Below are positions 42,762 through 55,636 of a stretch of 64,000 nucleotides of DNA, piece after piece. The notes beneath the pieces are model-generated. The model saw nothing but the letters and a program-made list of their open reading frames with translations, ran no database searches and had not been told where the DNA came from. The translations under genes and the position numbers were made by a program. Source of the stretch: Fimbriosthenelais zetlandica. Its lineage: Eukaryota. The stretch covers positions 4,092,001 to 4,156,000 of the forward strand of contig OZ365115.1 of the NCBI GenBank assembly GCA_977030845.1, written 5' to 3'. Within the stretch, counting starts at the first letter, position 1. Every line of letters starts with the position of its first letter.

Positions 42762-44765
42762 ATGGCCTCAGTGAAGAGAAAGATCGTCCTTCCAGTTTTG
42801 CTGGCGACGGTAGTTGTCGTCTTTGCTCTCCGATATTACAACAGGCAGCAACTAGAGCAACAAATCTCCACTGACCTTGTCCACAGGCCTCCACAGCCCC
42901 CCATCTCAGCGTCTCCTGGCTACGACAGTTCATGGAAAAAAATGGGGCGTCAAGGGCCGATTGAGGAGTTGAAATTATCGAGGAGGGCGGGGGAGACCCC
43001 TACACGATCTACCAGGGCTTCAGACAACCCTAAAACAATCACTAAATCACCCTCACATCAAAAACTTCACCCGGGAGCTTTGAATGAGGATGATAAAAAA
43101 AAGGAAGACCCTCAACACAACTTGACGAAGGGAATTAATCCAGCTCCAACTAAGGTGATGCAGAAAGTTACGGAGCGTCCGGTGAAGTTTACAAGAGGGC
43201 TACTTGGACGGTTGAAGGAGACTGATAGGCACAGACAGGCAAACCAAGTGGAGATGGATAGGGGAAAGACAGTGCCTAAGACAGGGGACAGGGAAGGAGT
43301 CCTGAATGAGGGAGGTATTAAAATTGGGAAGGTCGGATCTGGGGGTACGACAGGCGTAAGGAAACCTACATCTGTTCCAGTTACTCGACCACCACTGAAG
43401 AAAATTTGGGATGATAGTCTTCGTGGAGGCCAGGGCCAAGCTCTTGGACAGGGCCAGGCTCTTGGACAGAAAACCTCTTCCAAACCTAGTGGGTTAACAC
43501 AAGCTAGACACATTCAACGTGTGACTTATCCTGCAGATCTCAAACAGGGCATAAAATCCATACATATCAAACATGTCACACCCCCGAGACTGGTCCCCCC
43601 AGTTAGAAATGTCACCCCACAGAAGCCAGTTAATATCTGGAACGAGCAACTAAAACCAACCCCCAAGCCTGACGAGCTGAATGGGAAAACATCAGGACCT
43701 TCTGCTGGGAAAGGAAACAACACAAATAATATCAAACCAGAGCCACCAGTAGACGTTAGCCTACACTCAAACCGACTCCCTGCTAAAGCACTGCGTTCGG
43801 TTGAGTTAAAGTTCCGTTACCAACCCGAATCGGGTAAGAGATATGCTGTTATGTCAGTGGCGGCTATTGGGGAGGATTACAATTATGTATTCCCGCTACC
43901 ACTGACGGTGGAGGCGTGGAAGAGGGTGGGGTATGATTCTATTGTACTTTTAATCGGCAGTGAGCAGCACTGGATGTCGCACCCCGTGTTAAGCTATGTC
44001 CTTAAGGAGTTACGCCGTCACGATCCTGTCGTCCTCTTCCTGGACTCAGGCAGGAACCACTGGGTGTTCCTCAGCCAAGTCTCACGACTCTTTGTCAGTG
44101 AGTTGTTCGACTGGCGAGGGTTGGAGGACAACTCTGTTCTCCTCACCACAGATGTGGACATCTGGCCTCTCGCGAAAAACACATACATACTCCCTGAAGG
44201 GAAAAAGATCCGAGCTCTTAACTCGGAGTGCTGCGGCACATTCCGCCATGATAGTAAAGTTCATAAAATGTTGCCCATGTGTTCACTGATTATGTCCATT
44301 AGAACATGGACGGAGGTGATGGCATTATCCCACCCCCTCTCCTCTACTAACCCCGTGTCTGATATTGTCACATATTTTGAGGATGAATTCGGCTCTGATC
44401 TCATCTCTAAACCTGTTAATAAAGGTGATAACGATGGCTGGTATTTAGATCAGCATATGGTCTCTGTTAGGGTGAAGCAGTGGCAGGAAAAGCACGGAGT
44501 TGAGAAGGTGGATTATGTACGTAGATCTGTCAGCATCGACAGAGTGGACAGGTCTGGCTGGAGGCCGTACCACATAGAACGAAAAAAAGATGCCCACTTA
44601 CTCAACTACCTTTATCAACCAGACGCGTGGGGCAAGGTGATGCCTTTAATCAGAGCCTTGTTCCCTGACCAATCTGACGACATGGTCAGCTACAGAGAGG
44701 GCTTCATCAGGATGCTGCTAGAGCAGAAACTGAGGCGGGAAAAAAAGACAGAAGGAAAAAGTTAA
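42762..44765 (+). CDS. Type II membrane protein, 667 aa, long stem plus putative GT-A-like glycosyltransferase domain
   Basis: Uninterrupted ORF: basic N-terminus, TM IVLPVLLATVVVVFAL, ~350-aa P/K/T/G-rich stem, then a ~290-aa globular domain with YVFPLPLTVEAWKRVG, SQVSRLF, TTDVD (DxD), WYLDQ, RVDR and DAHL motifs. The enzyme call is inferred from topology and the DxD motif only. Confidence 0.75.
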   Translation: MASVKRKIVLPVLLATVVVVFALRYYNRQQLEQQISTDLVHRPPQPPISASPGYDSSWKKMGRQGPIEELKLSRRAGETPTRSTRASDNPKTITKSPSHQKLHPGALNEDDKKKEDPQHNLTKGINPAPTKVMQKVTERPVKFTRGLLGRLKETDRHRQANQVEMDRGKTVPKTGDREGVLNEGGIKIGKVGSGGTTGVRKPTSVPVTRPPLKKIWDDSLRGGQGQALGQGQALGQKTSSKPSGLTQARHIQRVTYPADLKQGIKSIHIKHVTPPRLVPPVRNVTPQKPVNIWNEQLKPTPKPDELNGKTSGPSAGKGNNTNNIKPEPPVDVSLHSNRLPAKALRSVELKFRYQPESGKRYAVMSVAAIGEDYNYVFPLPLTVEAWKRVGYDSIVLLIGSEQHWMSHPVLSYVLKELRRHDPVVLFLDSGRNHWVFLSQVSRLFVSELFDWRGLEDNSVLLTTDVDIWPLAKNTYILPEGKKIRALNSECCGTFRHDSKVHKMLPMCSLIMSIRTWTEVMALSHPLSSTNPVSDIVTYFEDEFGSDLISKPVNKGDNDGWYLDQHMVSVRVKQWQEKHGVEKVDYVRRSVSIDRVDRSGWRPYHIERKKDAHLLNYLYQPDAWGKVMPLIRALFPDQSDDMVSYREGFIRMLLEQKLRREKKTEGKS

Positions 44766-49188: not shown

Positions 49189-52100
49189 ATGGGGGCTTGG
49201 TGGAAATTGTTCCTTGTGGTAAACCACATTGTCATCAACAGTACACCTCACCTCCTGGCCACAGACGTTCTGGTAATAGTGTTATAATTGTAATACCAAC
49301 TTAATTTTCATTATTATAACCGATATAAAAAAATGTTTATTATAAAATCTAATTGTTATATATAATAGTTATTGAAAAAGGCCCTTTGTCGCCCATAACA
49401 GGGCCCATTTTCACAGAGAAATTCATTATTTGAATCTAGTTTTCACCTTTAAACATAATATTTCTGCTCCACACCCTTCATTCCTCTTCCCTTTCAACTT
49501 ATGAAACCATTTTCTGATGTTAGTTAGGCCCTATGTGTTTGATGTGGAGAAATTAATAACATTAAATTAAATTAATAATAATTTAGTAACATTCATTGGC
49601 ATTGTATACATTTTATGTTGTTTACATTTTTAGGTAAAGGATGATGGATTTCGTCATAAGAGATCTGTTCCCACGGGAAAATGCTGGAGTAAGTCCATGT
49701 AATATTATGTATGTAGGGCCTAATAGTCTGTCCAAACTATAGCAAATTCAAATTAGTAGTTCAAATTAGGCATTCACTGTGCATTTAAATTACATAGCTT
49801 CTTAACCTAATAATATCCAGACAATATTCTGCTGACTATTTTTTTTAACTTGTTAACTAACTGTTATTTTTAACAGGTCGAGATGATTTACTTTCAAGTT
49901 TAGACACACGACGGTATCATTATGATGGCAATTACAAGCGTCTCTACCTTGTACAAATATGCTGGGGTCAGAGTGTCTCTGAGACAGCCCCCAACGACCA
50001 AGTTTCAGGATGTCCATATGGTGTATGTACTTTCGCATGTTTCTCTTACAACTTCAATAGGCAGGGCAATGAAATTTGTACCTGCTCATCCAGCATAAAT
50101 AATAAATACCTCTACCCCTTAAAAACAAAATACAACCCCGCTATAATCATGAACGTTTCTTAATAGGTAAGTGAGTGCTTCTTCGGCAGTGAAGTGGAGA
50201 TAATTGCCTGCGGCTGTAAAGTATGGAGTACCTTTGTACCTGGGATTAACTCTTACTATAATAAATGCACCGAAATATTATTCAACGCCCCAGAATGGAG
50301 AAACGAAGAAGCTTCGAGACTGGCAAACGAATGTCGCCCACCTCTAGGCGACCATTACATTCCTAATACACTCAATGTCAAAGGTTAGTTAGTAAATATA
50401 ATTCATATGACCAAATTTTAATGGTTAAAATTGTACTTCACTTAAGATACCTTGAGTTAAGTTGGTTCAAGCTGGTAGACAGCGAGTAAACTAAGAACCT
50501 AAAAGACGTTAATATGCTTGTCACATTCTGTTTATGAAGTAATTGTTTTTCCATTTAGATGAAGATTATTGTAGTTCGGGCCGAAACCAGTGTAGTCCTG
50601 GCAGATCAGTATGTCGTCCGATCTATGGAAACTATGAGTGTGCCTGCACAGATGACTATGTGGATACATATGGCAGTAACGATGGAAGCAACCCTCCCAG
50701 GAGAGGGATTGATTGCAGAAAAGAAGGTAATACTGATGTTCATGACTGTATAGTAACAAGGACTGGTTTCAGAGTATGATGAACTTTAGCTTGATCAAAG
50801 ACACGAATATAATATAATATATATTATATTAGTATCTTTGGTATGATGTAACAGAGGGTTTCTGGACATCAGTTTTTAGCCCTTAATTGCACAGTCTACT
50901 ATGGCCTTGTACGTCTCCCTGGAAGTGCTCTTCTCTTGAACGCTGACACGTCAGAACCCCACATGCATTACGCACTTTTTGAGAAGATATCCAACATTTT
51001 ATTCATGTATTTAAGGGGCCTTTACAGCTGTCAGGGAGTTAAGAATTGGACAGAAGTCATCATATGTCATATGCCTTGATTATCTTTATATCTGATTTTG
51101 TGATAATAATAACATTACTTTTTATACAGAATCTGACACTGATGATAAACCATTGATTGAGGCTTTATGGGTTCGCATCTTGATTGGATTATCCGTCTTG
51201 GTTGTGCTTCTTGTATTCCTCTTCTGTGTATGCTCATCACACTGCTCGAGGTGTGTTCAGAAAATACATCACCTCTTATACAAAGACGGTTAGTGATTGC
51301 TAATTAACAATTAGATTGCTAATTTCCATTTACGACTATGTCTCCATATTGGTAGATGTCTATGTAATTTTAACCATTTTAAATTACAGACCAAGCTTAT
51401 GTAATCGCTGAGGAATTGCAAAAACTGATTGGGCTCTTACCAGAAATCAAGGTGAATATTCAGTAGAAAGACCACTTTCGAGTCAAACAATTGGATAGCC
51501 CTTTCATTCACCCTCGGGGCATACATCACCCATCTAATGTCGAGGTCAGTTCTATCTATACCCTTAACATTTCTTATGGTTGTAGGTAAAGAAATTCAAG
51601 AACTGGGCCTCGACTCAGGTGGTGAAGGGAGCGTTGACAGTTCGACCACGATCAGTGGAGGAAGTCCAGGCTGTGGTCATTGCTGCGGGCAAGCTGGGTC
51701 TGGAAGTACGAGCCACCGGAGAAAAACACTCATGGACACCCATGTTCCATTCTGATGTGAGGAGAGGGATCATCATGTACGTAGGAAACATTGAGAGGCC
51801 CTGTGGTGCACCAAGGATCGAACTCAGTCAGGTAAGACATTTCTATAGTCAGGTTCCTGCAACTGCCTCCAAGCTCTGCATTCTGCTTCTAGAGTGCGTG
51901 TTAAATCGCTTTTTTCCCCGAATCTTTTCAGGTACAGGTTTGCATTTCGTCCCCAAAATAAGAAAAGGAATGAAATTGTGCCTTTATGTAACATACTGTA
52001 CTGTACTTGACTAGAATTGTTCAGACTATGTTGTTTGAATTTCAGGATGCAACCGGGACGTACGTCACCTTTGCACCAGCAGTAACAACTGGTGAATTTA

Positions 52101-55100
52101 TGCAGTTTCAGCTGAATCACGGTGTCATCATTCCAGCTAATGTCGTCCTCCGAGAGGTCACTATGGGAGGTGTCATAGCCGGAGCTTGTCATGTAAGGCT
52201 TTATAATACACCTCCGCATTTTCTCTGCTAGGAGCTTGATGAGCATGTCAATAATTTCTTGAAATGGCCTTGTATTCTAAGTCAGAGCCAATTTGGACAT
52301 TTAGAAACAATTGCATTTTTATAAGTCTGCTTGGCGTAAAAATTAAGCTGAAAATTTTAGAATGCTCGTGCCCTCAGCAATGTGCATCACAGGTCATTTT
52401 TTTAAGGTCAGAGAAACTGGCACTCACTATTCACAGATTCAGTGTTTTGACAATCCATCTGCCGAGATGTGCCCGAGTCTAGTTTGATAAGATCTTTATT
52501 TTCATACAGGGAGTAGGACGTGATGTGCAGACTGTGTCAGACAGTGTGGTAGGGATGAGAGTGGTTGATGGTCATGGTGTACTGAGGACATACTCCATGC
52601 AGCAAGATCCAGACATGATGCGAGCATTACAATGTAACCTTGGCTTGTGGGGCATCATGACTGAAATCACTATCAAGGTATACACACCCTAATTCAATTT
52701 TATATTCCTGGCGGATAGTGTCGTGGGAGGCTGCTGTAAATGCTGTCTCGTGAATTTCTACTATATACATGTACCCAAAGACCTGTTTAGACAATCTAAC
52801 AAGCTTTGCACAATCTTTCTGTAAAAAAATATTTTTCTCCTATAGGTTGAGCCAATGCGAATAGTCCATACACAAAACCTTTTCTTCAAAGTCAGGGATA
52901 TCTTCTATAACAAAGAGAACTTGAAAAACATCGTCAATGGGAACTGGTCTGTGGAAATGTTCTGGTTCCCATTTACTGGCATTTCCAAATGGGAGGCAGT
53001 GGAGGCACTTGTACAGAAACGCATTGATGACGGAGAGTGGGATCCTCTGGAAGATGTGGTCTATGTCAGACTTGTCAACAACGCTGTGTCCACAGAGATG
53101 CTCGCAGGTGACCAGGTGTATGATGCAATAAACATGAATGATCTGAGGACTGTCCAACTCTATGACAAGGTCAATGAGTTTTTGGCTAAATATCCCCATG
53201 TGGCTCCTTTCTTCTTGCAGAGTCAGGTAGGAAATATAATTATCTGAAAATTGAGAAATATTACTGCAACCTATATAGGCCTATACGGTACATATATATA
53301 TATATATAGGTTACATTATACAATTATGCTGGCAAATGCCTTACATCTATTTTGTCGTACTGTATGCATTTCCATCCCACCACATCTTGTTAAATTCAGT
53401 ATCCATGATCTAGAGCCTGGTAGCCCAGATTTTTGTTCCACCTCGTAATGCTATTTAGTGAATAGACCACTTAGGATCAGCCCGAGACTTGTCTAGCCTG
53501 TTAATTAATATTCTCGAGACGGTACTTTATTTATTTATCATTACACAGCTGTCAACTTTAAAGAGCATCTATGATGGACACCTCACCCAGCATTTACCAC
53601 ATGCTATCCACTTTAGGGACTATATTGAGAGTGTGCCTTTGAACTGCATGGAATGGGCCTTCAGCGTTGATCAGGATTTTAACAATATTTGTTATGCCTC
53701 TCAGGTTGGTAAAGCCCTAGTTTTTTTACACTCGATTAAAAGCTCATGAGTAAAATAATGTGATAATTTGTACATTGTTGCAAGAGTTGGTTAACCCAGC
53801 TTGTCTATAGCATCTTGATAGTTCAACATTTTCCGTCTGATTCACAAAAAGTTTGGTTTGCATTTATTTATTTGAACATAATCATGATGACAACATTAAT
53901 TTTGCAGAGAACAGTGGAGCTGGTCTACGCCGAGGCTAGACAGGGGCGTTTTCCTGTAAACTTGGCGTTGGATATGCGATTTGTTGCTGACAGCAATGCT
54001 TACCTTGCCCCAGCAGTCTGTGGAAACAGAAAATATGGTGGAACAGGTTTGTATATTAATTGTAGTCGTCATGCCTTTTTCTGGCATGCCGGATAAGCCT
54101 CACACTAACACAAGCCTCACACATATAAATTTATTTAGCCAATTTATGTATATTTGTCATAGAGCGAGGCTAAAACCCAGATAGGCCTCTGGTTGGTAAA
54201 TAATCAGTTGGGCCAGTATACATGTAATTCGAATTTGCAGTGTTTTAATTGTTCTTTCAGGATTGACATGCTATATTGAAATACTGACGTCTCAAGGCAC
54301 CCCAGGCTGGGAAGATTTTTGTACCATGGTCTACTATGTGTGGCGGGATCTACATGGTGCCAAGCCTCACTGGTGCAAAATGTGGTCATTCCTCCCAGAT
54401 ATTGACAACTTCATTAGACAGGTAGGCCTAAACCTCATGTATTGACATTAATTTTTTAATAACCTTAATGATTGCAGCATAAGAATCACCTTAAAAAAAC
54501 TTATGATGTTATGATGCAACTTCTGACCACCCTGATAACCGTGTCGACCCTTAAGCGGGTGATCCACTTTGGCGAAAATGGCCCGCCAATGTGCGCTAAG
54601 CCCCGCTAATGTGCGCTAACCTACCCCGCCAAGGCCCGCCCGACCTCCCCCCGCCAATGTGGATCAGCTACCCCCGCCGAGCCCCAACGTTCCATTGTGC
54701 GCTAAGCCCCGCGAGCCCTTCGCGGGATTATCTAGCATGTTTGATATTTTCGCATTGGCGGGGTATTGGCGGGGTAAAAAACAGTGCGCTAATGTGGATC
54801 AACCCAAGAGCGCTGTAGCGCCACCATTGTCATAGATACAAAATCATTCTTGGCGGGACCACTTACTAAAATGCCCCGCTAATGTGGATCAGTCATTGGC
54901 GGGTCTTGGCAGTCGTCGTAAGGACCGGCAAAACCCGCCAGGAAAACTCCACTAACAAACCGCCAGGTTTTAGCGGGCTAAACCGCTCAAGTGGATCCAC
55001 CGCTTTACGCCAGTATCAGGAAGGCTCGTAACAATCATGGGACTCGTAAGCACTTGAAGAATGGGATAAGCACTCGGGAAACCTTATGAGACGTTACTAT

Positions 55101-55636
55101 AACAACCATGAGGTTACGCCAAAATTAATAGATAATCTAATCAAAACGATAGGGCCGTAAGTGTTGCTAAAGACGGGACTCCACTGCTGCGACAGTGCTT
55201 GCGACACTACTGCGACAAAGGTGATGCTTGTGAAGTTGTGTAAGAATAAAATTTCTAAATTGTGATTCAAGTGTCTAAGGCCTTAAGGCCGTCCTCCAAT
55301 GGTAGGCTAAATTTATCATTGAAACACAAGCATCACCTTTGTCGCAGACGTGTCGCAAGCAAAATCGCAGCAGTGGAGTCCTGGCTTAAGATTCAAATCT
55401 TGAAATAATTGATCAACCTCTAAGTGTTTGGATATCTTTGCATGCAGACATACAGATATCAGCTTCCCAAGTTCCTGGCAGCTCTAGAGAGGTCGGGTGC
55501 AGACCCGCATGGCATGTTCCTTCCCAGTTGTCTGGAGAAGATTTTCTACCCCCATGGTCATCCAGGCAAACACCGTCACCAACAAAACACTGGAATGCTC
55601 CTGGAAATGAAGGATGATTCAAATGTATATTATTAA
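49189..55636 (+). CDS. EGF-domain single-pass membrane protein fused to a cytoplasmic L-gulonolactone-oxidase-family (FAD_binding_4 + ALO-type) oxidase, ~825 aa, 15 coding exons
   Basis: Exons 49189-49272, 49634-49688, 49877-50022, 50167-50383, 50559-50726 (EGF, phase 1-1), 51130-51288 (TM), 51390-51451, 51586-51831, 52046-52192, 52510-52677, 52846-53226, 53549-53704, 53908-54046, 54261-54421, 55448-55636. All GT-AG, phases consistent, 2478 nt. Oxidase motifs: FKNWA, PRSVEEVQ, VRATGEKHSW, TMGGVIAGACHG, CNLGLWGI, KPHWCK, DPHGMF. Confidence 0.82.
54531..55020. mobile_element. ~490-bp GC-rich intronic element with short TIRs and internal repeats
   Basis: CCTGATA...TATCAGG termini, subterminal GATCCACTT/AAGTGGATC, and repeated AATGTGCGCTAA / AATGTGGATC / CCGCCA motifs. 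Composition differs sharply from the host intron. Confidence 0.5.
55167..55389. mobile_element. Palindromic MITE-like element, copy 3 (intronic)
   Basis: GGGACTCCACTGCTGCGA...TCGCAGCAGTGGAGTCCTGGCTTAA, same family as 260 and 4387. It ends about 60 bp upstream of the last oxidase exon. Confidence 0.75.

What the first reader, a model, noticed from the sequence alone, without database searches (positions are those of the whole stretch)
49189..55636. Receptor-like flavo-oxidase: EGF ectodomain and TM fused to a gulonolactone-oxidase-family enzyme
Seen in sequence: 15 phase-compatible exons join a signal-like N-terminus, a Cys-rich region, a Ca-binding-type EGF exon (DEDYC...C...C...YECAC...DC), a TM helix (LWVRILIGLSVLVVLLVFLFCVC) and a complete FAD oxidase. 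The oxidase has no start of its own: an in-frame TAG acceptor directly precedes VKKFKNWA, only 134 bp after the previous exon. Established: the His in G-x-x-H-S (here GEKHSW) carries covalent FAD in GULO/ALO enzymes, which release H2O2. Inference: a type I membrane protein with a cytosolic oxidase, possibly a ligand- or adhesion-regulated source of H2O2 or ascorbate-like product. I do not recognise this architecture from any described protein.
Basis: partly seen in the sequence, partly recalled or inferred. Interest (0 to 1): 0.9.

Follow-up and report, generated by a model that had tools for sequence, protein, structure and literature searches.

The report
Membrane-anchored GULO-like flavoenzyme gene model
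A probable worm gene seems to join a small cell-surface part and a membrane anchor to an enzyme distantly related to the one that makes vitamin C, a combination seen in no other protein searched, but no RNA evidence could be reached to prove the join.

Summary
Fifteen GT-AG exons (49189-55636, + strand) give one open 825-aa frame: a weak signal-like start, an orphan Cys-rich part, one EGF-like exon, one strong transmembrane exon, then a complete FAD_binding_4 + ALO flavoenzyme.

The enzyme is real. It aligns colinearly with "L-gulonolactone oxidase-like" proteins of bivalves, corals and sponges (about 36% identity, E 1e-108 to 1e-114). It shares three intron positions with the Mytilus gene.

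It is not true GULO. It has HWCK instead of HWAK, and its relatives score far below the sugar-lactone-oxidase cut-off. Val412 sits where GULO has the oxygen-enabling Gly, so H2O2 release is doubtful.

The join to the TM and EGF exons is the most economical reading:
- Exon 7 is homologous to the family's N-terminal helix but has no ATG.
- The TM exon lies 101 bp upstream in the matching phase.
- No rival start exon lies between exon 2 and exon 7, and no poly(A) signal follows the TM exon before the oxidase exons.
- Relatives attach other membrane-targeting N-termini (MGC acylation-like motifs, PLAT) at the same point.

No transcript and no orthologue with this architecture could be found, so the fusion stays unproven (about 0.55). 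"Receptor-like" regulation is speculation.

The parts
49189..49272 (+). Exon 1: ATG and weak signal-like N-terminus (MGAWWKLFLVVNHIVINSTPHLLATDVL)
   Evidence: First ATG of its open frame, GT donor in phase 0. Hydrophobicity is only 1.27, so signal-peptide status is not settled.
49634..49688 (+). Exon 2, basic linker, ends in phase 1
   Evidence: AG/GT sites and frame continuity; no homologue.
49877..50022 (+). Exon 3, Cys-containing orphan ectodomain part
   Evidence: Frame continuity. Its donor is the weakest of the gene. No Pfam hit.
50167..50383 (+). Exon 4, Cys-rich orphan ectodomain part (5 Cys)
   Evidence: 72 open codons with AG/GT sites. No homologue by word search or Atlas.
50559..50726 (+). 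Exon 5, one EGF-like domain, symmetric phase 1-1
   Evidence: Pfam EGF_CA E 1.9e-4, 22 bits (GA 27), plus FXa_inhibition and EGF_3; six Cys in EGF order.
51130..51288 (+). Exon 6: acidic stalk, single TM helix (aa 237-259), basic Cys-rich juxtamembrane stretch; phase 1-1; no in-frame ATG
   Evidence: KD19 of 3.27, the top of 677 open segments in the window. Strong acceptor ttactttttatacag.
51390..51451 (+). Exon 7: DQAYVIAEELQKLIGLLPEIK, the conserved N-terminal helix of the oxidase family; no ATG, stop three codons upstream of the acceptor
   Evidence: Aligns to LQKxIGxxPxxxIExFxNW of the relatives. The Mytilus gene has an intron at the same point within 1 nt.
51586..52677 (+). Exons 8-10 (51586-51831, 52046-52192, 52510-52677): FAD-binding domain with His345 (GEKHSW) and Val412 at the gatekeeper position
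   Evidence: Pfam FAD_binding_4 and TIGR01678/01679 exon-level hits. GalDH alignment. Two intron positions shared with Mytilus.
52846..55636 (+). Exons 11-15 (52846-53226, 53549-53704, 53908-54046, 54261-54421, 55448-55636): cap/substrate (ALO) domain with D685-M-R687 and H746-W-C-K749, stop at 55634
   Evidence: HMMER hits of exon 11. ALO hit. Colinear alignment to relatives with 50 of 65 family-conserved columns kept.
54553..55390 (.). Two inverted-repeat (MITE-like) insertions inside intron 14; they explain its 1026-bp length and are not part of the protein
   Evidence: Inverted repeats I2 (22-nt arms, 54553/55005) and I1 (66-nt arms, 55167-55390).

Best explanation
This is one gene of a probable annelid. 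It encodes a type I membrane protein with four parts:
- a short, poorly conserved Cys-rich ectodomain with one EGF-like module;
- one transmembrane helix;
- a roughly 25-residue basic, Cys-rich juxtamembrane linker;
- on the cytosolic face, a complete VAO-type flavoenzyme of a little-known metazoan 'GULO-like' family.

Shown here: the enzyme is intact, carries the His for covalent FAD, and keeps the Arg and Lys that bind aldonolactone-type substrates. It needs an upstream coding exon. The TM exon is the nearest compatible one.

Inferred: the N-terminal part serves mainly to place the enzyme at a membrane. Relatives appear to do the same with N-terminal acylation-like motifs or a PLAT domain joined at the same intron. 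The enzyme oxidises a still unknown hydroxyl or lactone substrate close to the bilayer. Because a bulky Val fills the oxygen gate, it probably passes electrons to an acceptor other than O2 rather than releasing H2O2.
For: - Gene model: 15 GT-AG exons, one open frame.
- Enzyme: E 1e-108 to 1e-114, about 36% identity over aa 282-796 to bivalve proteins. 50 of 65 family-conserved columns are kept.
- Exon 7 matches the family's N-terminal helix and has no ATG.
- Exon 6 lies 101 bp upstream, in phase 1, with no ATG of its own and a strong acceptor.
- Between exon 2 and exon 7 there is no alternative ATG-to-phase-1-donor exon. There is no AATAAA or ATTAAA between exon 6 and 53127.
- The TM segment is the most hydrophobic stretch of the whole window. 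Its N-side is acidic and its C-side basic.
- The Mytilus gene joins its own N-terminal module (first exon MGCGASSQA) at the same intron within 1 nt and shares two further intron positions.
- Sponge relatives carry an N-terminal PLAT domain. Several bivalve paralogues start MGCxxS.
- The gatekeeper alignment with GalDH and its A113G variant puts Val412 at that position. The meaning of that position is taken from PMC11099136.
Against: - No transcript could be reached.
- No protein with TM or EGF plus this oxidase appeared. The exhaustive HMMER search with exon 11 against 1.84 billion representatives gave 57 hits, and the only full-length ones were three bivalve proteins. Two family searches found none either.
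- The closest genomic relatives (L001, L002, L007) lack usable upstream sequence.
- Exons 1-4 are orphans with weak donors and weak frame statistics.
- The signal peptide is weak.
- Stand-alone relatives start about 10-13 residues before the LQK helix. That is just where exon 7 begins. The Mytilus gene has a 27-nt first coding exon, so a hidden tiny first exon is credible.
- The gatekeeper inference rests on an alignment at about 20-25% identity.
Confidence: 0.55

Rival explanations
1. There are two transcription units, or an alternative promoter. Exons 1-6 encode a small type I EGF membrane protein that ends just after exon 6 (read-through gives ...YKDG, then stop). The oxidase is a soluble cytosolic enzyme that starts from an unrecognised tiny first coding exon (ATG plus one base) spliced to exon 7.
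For: Stand-alone relatives begin 10-13 residues before the LQK helix, just where exon 7 starts. The Mytilus gene has a 27-nt first coding exon, and the GULO literature reports an ATG-only first exon (PMC6582580). Twelve weak ATG-to-phase-1-donor candidates lie 2.8 kb or more upstream of exon 7. No relative has a TM. An in-frame stop follows the exon 6 donor.
Against: No candidate start exon lies between exon 2 and exon 7. There is no poly(A) signal after exon 6 before the oxidase exons. Only 101 bp separate exon 6 and exon 7, so the two genes would have to overlap or interleave. Exon 6 has a usable donor in the right phase. The stop after that donor comes from the GTTAGT donor type, which exon 4 shows as well.
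Confidence: 0.3
2. It is one gene, but the TM exon is skipped in the main isoform. Exons 5, 4 and 2 all end in phase 1, so each can join exon 7 in frame. The product would be a secreted or lumenal flavoenzyme with a Cys-rich/EGF N-terminus.
For: Exons 5 and 6 are symmetric phase 1-1 exons, and several donors are phase-compatible. From general knowledge, many covalent-FAD VAO-family oxidases are secreted, for example plant GulLO-like and cytokinin oxidases.
Against: The splice sites of exon 6 are as good as those of its neighbours. Relatives point to cytosolic, membrane-tethered or mitochondrial locations (N-terminal MGC motifs, PLAT, basic presequence-like starts), not to secretion. The signal peptide is weak.
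Confidence: 0.08
3. Exons 1-5 are chance open frames and not part of any gene. Only the oxidase, and perhaps the TM exon, is real.
For: Exons 1-4 have no homologues. Frame discrimination is weak (0.083 against 0.051). Donor scores are low.
Against: The EGF_CA hit is significant at library level, with a full six-Cys pattern in a phase 1-1 exon. Composition is 3.6 SD above that of intron pieces. Exon 6 has no ATG and therefore needs upstream coding exons.
Confidence: 0.05

Closest known systems
Uncharacterised metazoan 'L-gulonolactone oxidase-like' proteins (for example the Mytilus edulis protein P0049, oyster, Pinctada and Tegillarca paralogues, anthozoan LOC114523184, homoscleromorph sponge LOC134187974)
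   Same: Colinear FAD_binding_4 + ALO core at about 32-37% identity. The LQKxIG helix, GxxHSW, EMR/DMR and HxxK motifs are shared. Three intron positions are shared with the Mytilus gene. A variable N-terminal module is attached just before the LQK helix.
   Different: None of about 40 full-length members has a signal peptide, EGF or TM. They use MGC-type acylation-like starts, a roughly 100-aa soluble N-domain, basic presequence-like starts, PLAT (sponges) or a C-terminal extension (corals).
Aldonolactone oxidoreductases: animal GULO, fungal ALO, plant GalDH (nearest solved structures 8qnr, 8qmy, 7sml)
   Same: VAO/PCMH fold family and ALO cap domain. His at the 8-alpha-N1-histidyl-FAD position as in GULO/ALO. 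Equivalents of Arg388 and Lys456 are kept (PMC11099136).
   Different: Only about 80 bits to GalDH. Relatives are far below the TIGR01678 cut-off. HWCK replaces GULO's HWAK (PMC6582580). Val replaces Gly (oxidases) or Ala (GalDH) at the oxygen gate. The cap domain is longer. True GULO is reported as lost in bivalves, which nevertheless keep this family.
Type II (VAO-type) cholesterol oxidase, alditol/xylitol oxidase, DprE1
   Same: Next-best solved relatives of the family profile (E 1e-13 to 1e-6). Exon 8 alone hits cholesterol oxidase 3js8 best. Some relatives give weak Chol_subst-bind hits.
   Different: Similarity is confined to the FAD domain and is lower than to GalDH. There is no evidence on substrate.
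Membrane-anchored flavoenzymes with an ectodomain or N-terminal anchor (Duox; DHCR24, a VAO-family enzyme with an N-terminal TM). This comparison comes from general knowledge and was not tested here.
   Same: The working principle: a flavin redox domain is held at the cytosolic face by a TM segment.
   Different: The folds and electron paths differ (Duox), or there is no ectodomain and a signal-anchor topology (DHCR24). Neither has an EGF ectodomain in front of a VAO/ALO enzyme.

Membership tests
True GULO/ALO (sugar 1,4-lactone oxidase, TIGR01678) | FAD_binding_4 plus ALO domain pair | tested here: met
   Exon-level Pfam hits to FAD_binding_4 (E 1.2e-4) and ALO (E 0.037). Colinear relatives pass both gathering scores.
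True GULO/ALO (sugar 1,4-lactone oxidase, TIGR01678) | His for the covalent 8-alpha-N1-histidyl FAD | tested here: met
   His345 in GEKHSW aligns with the Leu of GalDH GSGLS, which is the His position of GULO/ALO (PMC11099136). The covalent bond itself was not tested.
True GULO/ALO (sugar 1,4-lactone oxidase, TIGR01678) | HWAK motif, said to be present in all animal GULO | tested here: not met
   The window has H746-W-C-K749; bivalve relatives have HLAK. The criterion comes from PMC6582580.
True GULO/ALO (sugar 1,4-lactone oxidase, TIGR01678) | Gly at the oxygen-gate position (GalDH Ala113) | tested here: not met
   An ungapped alignment anchored by HG...E...GG...HGxG puts Val412 there, and V or I in the family. 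Alignment identity is low, so confidence is moderate.
True GULO/ALO (sugar 1,4-lactone oxidase, TIGR01678) | Score above the curated family cut-off | tested here: not met
   Full-length relatives score 64-89 bits against a cut-off of 396.8. Window exons score 22-27 bits. The whole spliced protein could not be submitted.
True GULO/ALO (sugar 1,4-lactone oxidase, TIGR01678) | Substrate-binding Arg388 and Lys456 equivalents | tested here: met
   Arg687 (DMR) and Lys749 (HWCK) (PMC11099136).
Metazoan GULO-like family (bivalve, coral, sponge) | Colinear full-length similarity and family-conserved residues | tested here: met
   E 1e-108 to 1e-114 over aa 282-796; 50 of 65 conserved columns kept.
Metazoan GULO-like family (bivalve, coral, sponge) | Shared gene structure | tested here: met
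   Introns before the LQK helix (within 1 nt), at RISN|RKKC = ELSQ|DATG, and at GCH|GVG are shared with the Mytilus gene. The ENA contigs L001, L002 and L007 share exon boundaries.
Calcium-binding EGF (EGF_CA) | Six Cys in EGF order within a phase 1-1 exon | tested here: met
   C172, C179, C186, C195, C197 and C220 in exon 5.
Calcium-binding EGF (EGF_CA) | Ca-binding consensus D-x-D/N-E/Q-C ... D/N ... Y/F, and the Pfam gathering score | tested here: not met
   The sequence is D-E-D-Y-C (Tyr where Glu/Gln is expected) and C-R-P (no Asn/Asp after Cys3). It scores 22 bits against a gathering score of 27. The consensus is quoted from general knowledge.
Type I single-pass membrane protein | Cleavable signal peptide | tested here: inconclusive
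   The N-terminal hydrophobic stretch is interrupted by Asn and His (KD 1.27). No signal-peptide predictor was available.
Type I single-pass membrane protein | One TM helix with the positive-inside charge pattern | tested here: met
   The single TM spans aa 237-259. The N-flank is ESDTDDKPLIEAL and the C-flank is SSHCSRCVQKIHHLLYK.

The most novel reading that the evidence does not exclude
The fusion is real and is the main isoform. It would be the first VAO/ALO-type flavoenzyme built as a type I surface protein with an EGF ectodomain. It would also be one of several independent solutions (TM helix, MGC acylation, PLAT domain) by which an uncharacterised, patchily distributed animal enzyme family is pinned to membranes. 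That pattern would point to a membrane-proximal, possibly lipid-linked, substrate. Through the ectodomain, it could also place or control a redox enzyme at cell contacts.
Probability: 0.4. Interest if true: 0.65.

Novelty: new variant of a known kind. Interest (0 to 1): 0.45.

Why it matters
If the join is real, it adds a new domain architecture to a large and well-studied flavoenzyme superfamily.

It also draws attention to a metazoan family that databases label 'L-gulonolactone oxidase-like', which is probably misleading. Bivalves, reported to have lost true GULO, keep many copies of it. The family combines the covalent-FAD His of the oxidases with a bulky residue at the oxygen gate, a pairing that the vitamin C enzymes studied so far do not show.

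The repeated attachment of different membrane-targeting modules at one conserved intron gives a testable hint about where the enzyme works.

If the join is not real, the locus is an ordinary pair of neighbouring genes, and it is a warning about merged gene models.

Tried and rejected
- HMMER search of exon 11 against 1.84 billion representatives. It gave 57 hits, mostly exon-sized fragments. Three long hits (P0003, P0043, P0048) were repeat artefacts.
- Genomic contigs of the closest relatives, fetched to look for upstream EGF/TM exons. L001 looks decayed and has a (TG)n run upstream. L002 ends 447 bp upstream of its exon-8-like exon. In L007 the upstream region is filled by a multi-copy transposon (24 contigs). 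L003, L004, L005 and L006 belong to stand-alone or coral-like types. One look-up was lost to a coordinate slip.
- tblastn of the relatives' N-terminal modules against the whole window found no hidden exon.
- Word search and Atlas search with exon 4 found nothing meaningful.
All such tests were therefore run exon by exon or locally.
- Structure prediction was not run. It could only have been done on a relative and would not bear on the fusion.
- Literature searches for the architecture or for the family found no description.
- Reading the enzyme as a cholesterol oxidase was considered, because exon 8 hits 3js8 best. It was rejected as unsupported, because the family profile is closer to GalDH.
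Full report
**What is in the sequence**

I rebuilt the model from the raw bases. Fifteen exons between 49189 and 55636 on the + strand all have AG acceptors and GT donors. All phases fit, and the exons join into a 2478-nt CDS of 825 aa plus a TAA stop at 55634. Introns are 101-403 bp, except the last one (1026 bp). That last intron holds two inverted-repeat, MITE-like insertions.

This covers the EGF-like exon 50559-50726, the hydrophobic exon 51130-51288, the TAG directly before VKKFKNWA at 51586, the 134-bp intron before it, and GEKHSW.

**Is it more than chance?**

The oxidase half certainly is. The spliced model aligns colinearly over aa 282-796 with full-length proteins at E 1e-108 to 1e-114 and 32-37% identity. 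It keeps 50 of the 65 columns that are conserved in at least 11 of 12 relatives, and the changes are mostly conservative.

The upstream half gives mixed evidence:
- The EGF exon hits Pfam EGF_CA at E 1.9e-4 (22 bits, below the gathering score of 27) and has the six Cys.
- The TM segment (aa 237-259) has a Kyte-Doolittle mean of 3.27. That is the highest among all 677 stop-free segments of at least 40 aa in the six frames of the window. Only one other reaches 3.0.
- Exons 1-4 are orphans. They have no Pfam family, no word-sharing protein and no meaningful Atlas neighbour.
- The composition of exons 1-6 is exon-like, 3.6 SD above same-length intron pieces. Frame discrimination is weak, and their donors score lower than most of the oxidase donors.

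**What the enzyme is**

It belongs to a family that databases call 'L-gulonolactone oxidase-like' or leave unnamed. The family has many paralogues in bivalves (Mytilus, oysters, Pinctada, Tegillarca, Potamilus). It has a few members in anthozoans and homoscleromorph sponges, plus unnamed fragments from environmental and run-level assemblies. Earlier notes of this scan call the genome probably annelid; I did not test that.

The family is related to the vitamin C enzymes but is not one of them:
- Relatives score 64-89 bits against TIGR01678, whose cut-off is 396.8.
- The family profile finds L-galactonolactone dehydrogenase as the nearest solved structure (E 1e-21). Alditol/xylitol oxidase, VAO-type cholesterol oxidase and DprE1 follow.
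- Henriques et al. (PMC6582580) state that animal GULO always carries HWAK and that GULO was lost in bivalves. This family has HLAK in bivalves and HWCK (H746-K749) in the window protein.
- His345 sits at the position that carries covalent FAD in GULO/ALO and is Leu in GalDH. Arg687 and Lys749 correspond to Arg388 and Lys456, which Boverio et al. (PMC11099136) report as conserved substrate-binding residues.
- The position that the same paper identifies as the switch between dehydrogenase (Ala113) and oxidase (Gly) is Val412 here, and V or I across the family. This follows an ungapped alignment anchored on both sides, in which the A113G variant in the PDB marks the column.

A bulkier side chain than Ala argues against fast reaction with O2. 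This is an inference from a low-identity alignment. The substrate is unknown.

**Is the fusion real?**

Exon 7 (DQAYVIAEELQKLIGLLPEIK) is the key. It aligns with the conserved N-terminal helix LQKxIGxxPxxxIExFxNW of every relative, so it belongs to the oxidase. It has no in-frame ATG, and a stop lies three codons before its acceptor. An upstream coding exon ending in phase 1 is therefore required.

The points in favour of the TM exon as that partner are:
- The TM exon lies 101 bp upstream and ends in phase 1. It has no ATG of its own and has a strong acceptor, so it is an internal exon too.
- Exons 5, 4 and 2 also end in phase 1.
- A scan for ATG-initiated open stretches ending at a phase-1 GT donor found none between exon 2 and exon 7. 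It found twelve weak ones further upstream, 2.8 kb or more from exon 7.
- There is no AATAAA or ATTAAA between exon 6 and 53127. A separate upstream gene would therefore have no obvious 3' end before the oxidase exons.
- The charge pattern (acidic before the helix, basic after it), the 14 Cys in the N-terminal part and a Cys cluster at the cytosolic edge (FCVCSSHCSRC) fit a type I topology with the enzyme inside the cell.

**Support from the family**

None of about 40 full-length relatives has a TM or EGF; their best hydrophobic window is at most 1.9. Their N-termini vary, however, and several look like targeting devices:
- MGCGASS, MGCTTSS and similar starts in bivalves. From general knowledge, these fit the myristoylation-plus-palmitoylation pattern of Src kinases and G-alpha subunits.
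- Basic presequence-like starts in some paralogues.
- A PLAT domain in sponges (E 5e-11).

In the Mytilus edulis gene the acylation-like motif sits in a 27-nt first coding exon. Its N-terminal module is joined to the oxidase by an intron directly before G90. That residue aligns with D277, the first residue of the window's exon 7. The two introns differ by one nucleotide (phase 0 against phase 1) under an ungapped alignment. Two further intron positions are identical.

The family thus has an old splice point in front of the core, at which different N-terminal modules are attached. A TM anchor would be one more solution of the same kind.

**What speaks against it**

- I could reach no transcript.
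- No orthologue with this architecture turned up. The exhaustive HMMER search with exon 11 found only three full-length proteins, all from bivalves.
- The genomic contigs that share exon boundaries with the window gene (L001, L002, L007) gave no usable upstream sequence.
- Stand-alone relatives start 10-13 residues before the LQK helix, just where exon 7 starts. Tiny first coding exons occur in this family and are reported for GULO. A hidden ATG-plus-one-base first exon for a soluble oxidase is therefore a serious rival.
- Because exons 5 and 6 are symmetric phase 1-1 exons, isoforms without the TM or the EGF exon would also stay in frame.

**Verdict**

The one-gene, TM-anchored reading is the most economical (about 0.55) but unproven. 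'GULO-family' holds only at the superfamily level. H2O2 or ascorbate production is doubtful. Ligand regulation is speculation.

As an architecture it would be a new variant of a known enzyme kind. The family-level pattern, an uncharacterised animal flavoenzyme with interchangeable membrane-targeting heads, is the more robust and, I think, the more useful result.

Noticed in passing
window 54553-55005 and 55167-55390: Intron 14 holds two inverted-repeat elements: 22-nt terminal arms 409 nt apart, with internal CCGCCAATGTGGATCA-type repeats, and a 66-nt-arm hairpin at 88% complementarity. They are probably MITEs.
   Followed up: partly
window 42762-44765 (+): An intronless 667-aa ORF with an N-terminal signal-anchor-like stretch (VLPVLLATVVVVFAL) and a low-complexity middle. 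It matches no Pfam family.
   Followed up: partly
L002:270-470: In a related ENA contig, the acceptor and the first ~30 nt of the exon-8-like exon (cag|attgatcgttttgagaac) occur three times in tandem at a spacing of about 85 nt before the real exon. This resembles the copied splice junctions noted elsewhere in this genome.
   Followed up: no
L001:2918-3130 and L002:448-690: Two close genomic relatives have Leu (SLSWSP, GLSWSP) where the window protein has His345. This would be a non-covalent-FAD variant within the same family. L001 also looks decayed.
   Followed up: no
window 50023-50160: After the exon 3 donor the frame stays open for 46 more codons with a Cys pattern (CTFACFSYNFNRQGNEICTC) and ends in TAA TAG just before exon 4. 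It may be a vestige of a longer Cys-rich exon or an alternative donor region.
   Followed up: no
proteins P0075, P0080, P0071 (bivalve-like relatives): Some paralogues start with basic stretches free of acidic residues (MLTYRKFFGRHIF..., MMLRTTQRLRY...) that look like mitochondrial presequences. Paralogues of one family may therefore go to different compartments.
   Followed up: no
L010:3001-3027 (Mytilus edulis OY782964.1): The first coding exon of the Mytilus relative is only 27 nt long (MGCGASSQA) and carries the whole acylation-like motif.
   Followed up: yes
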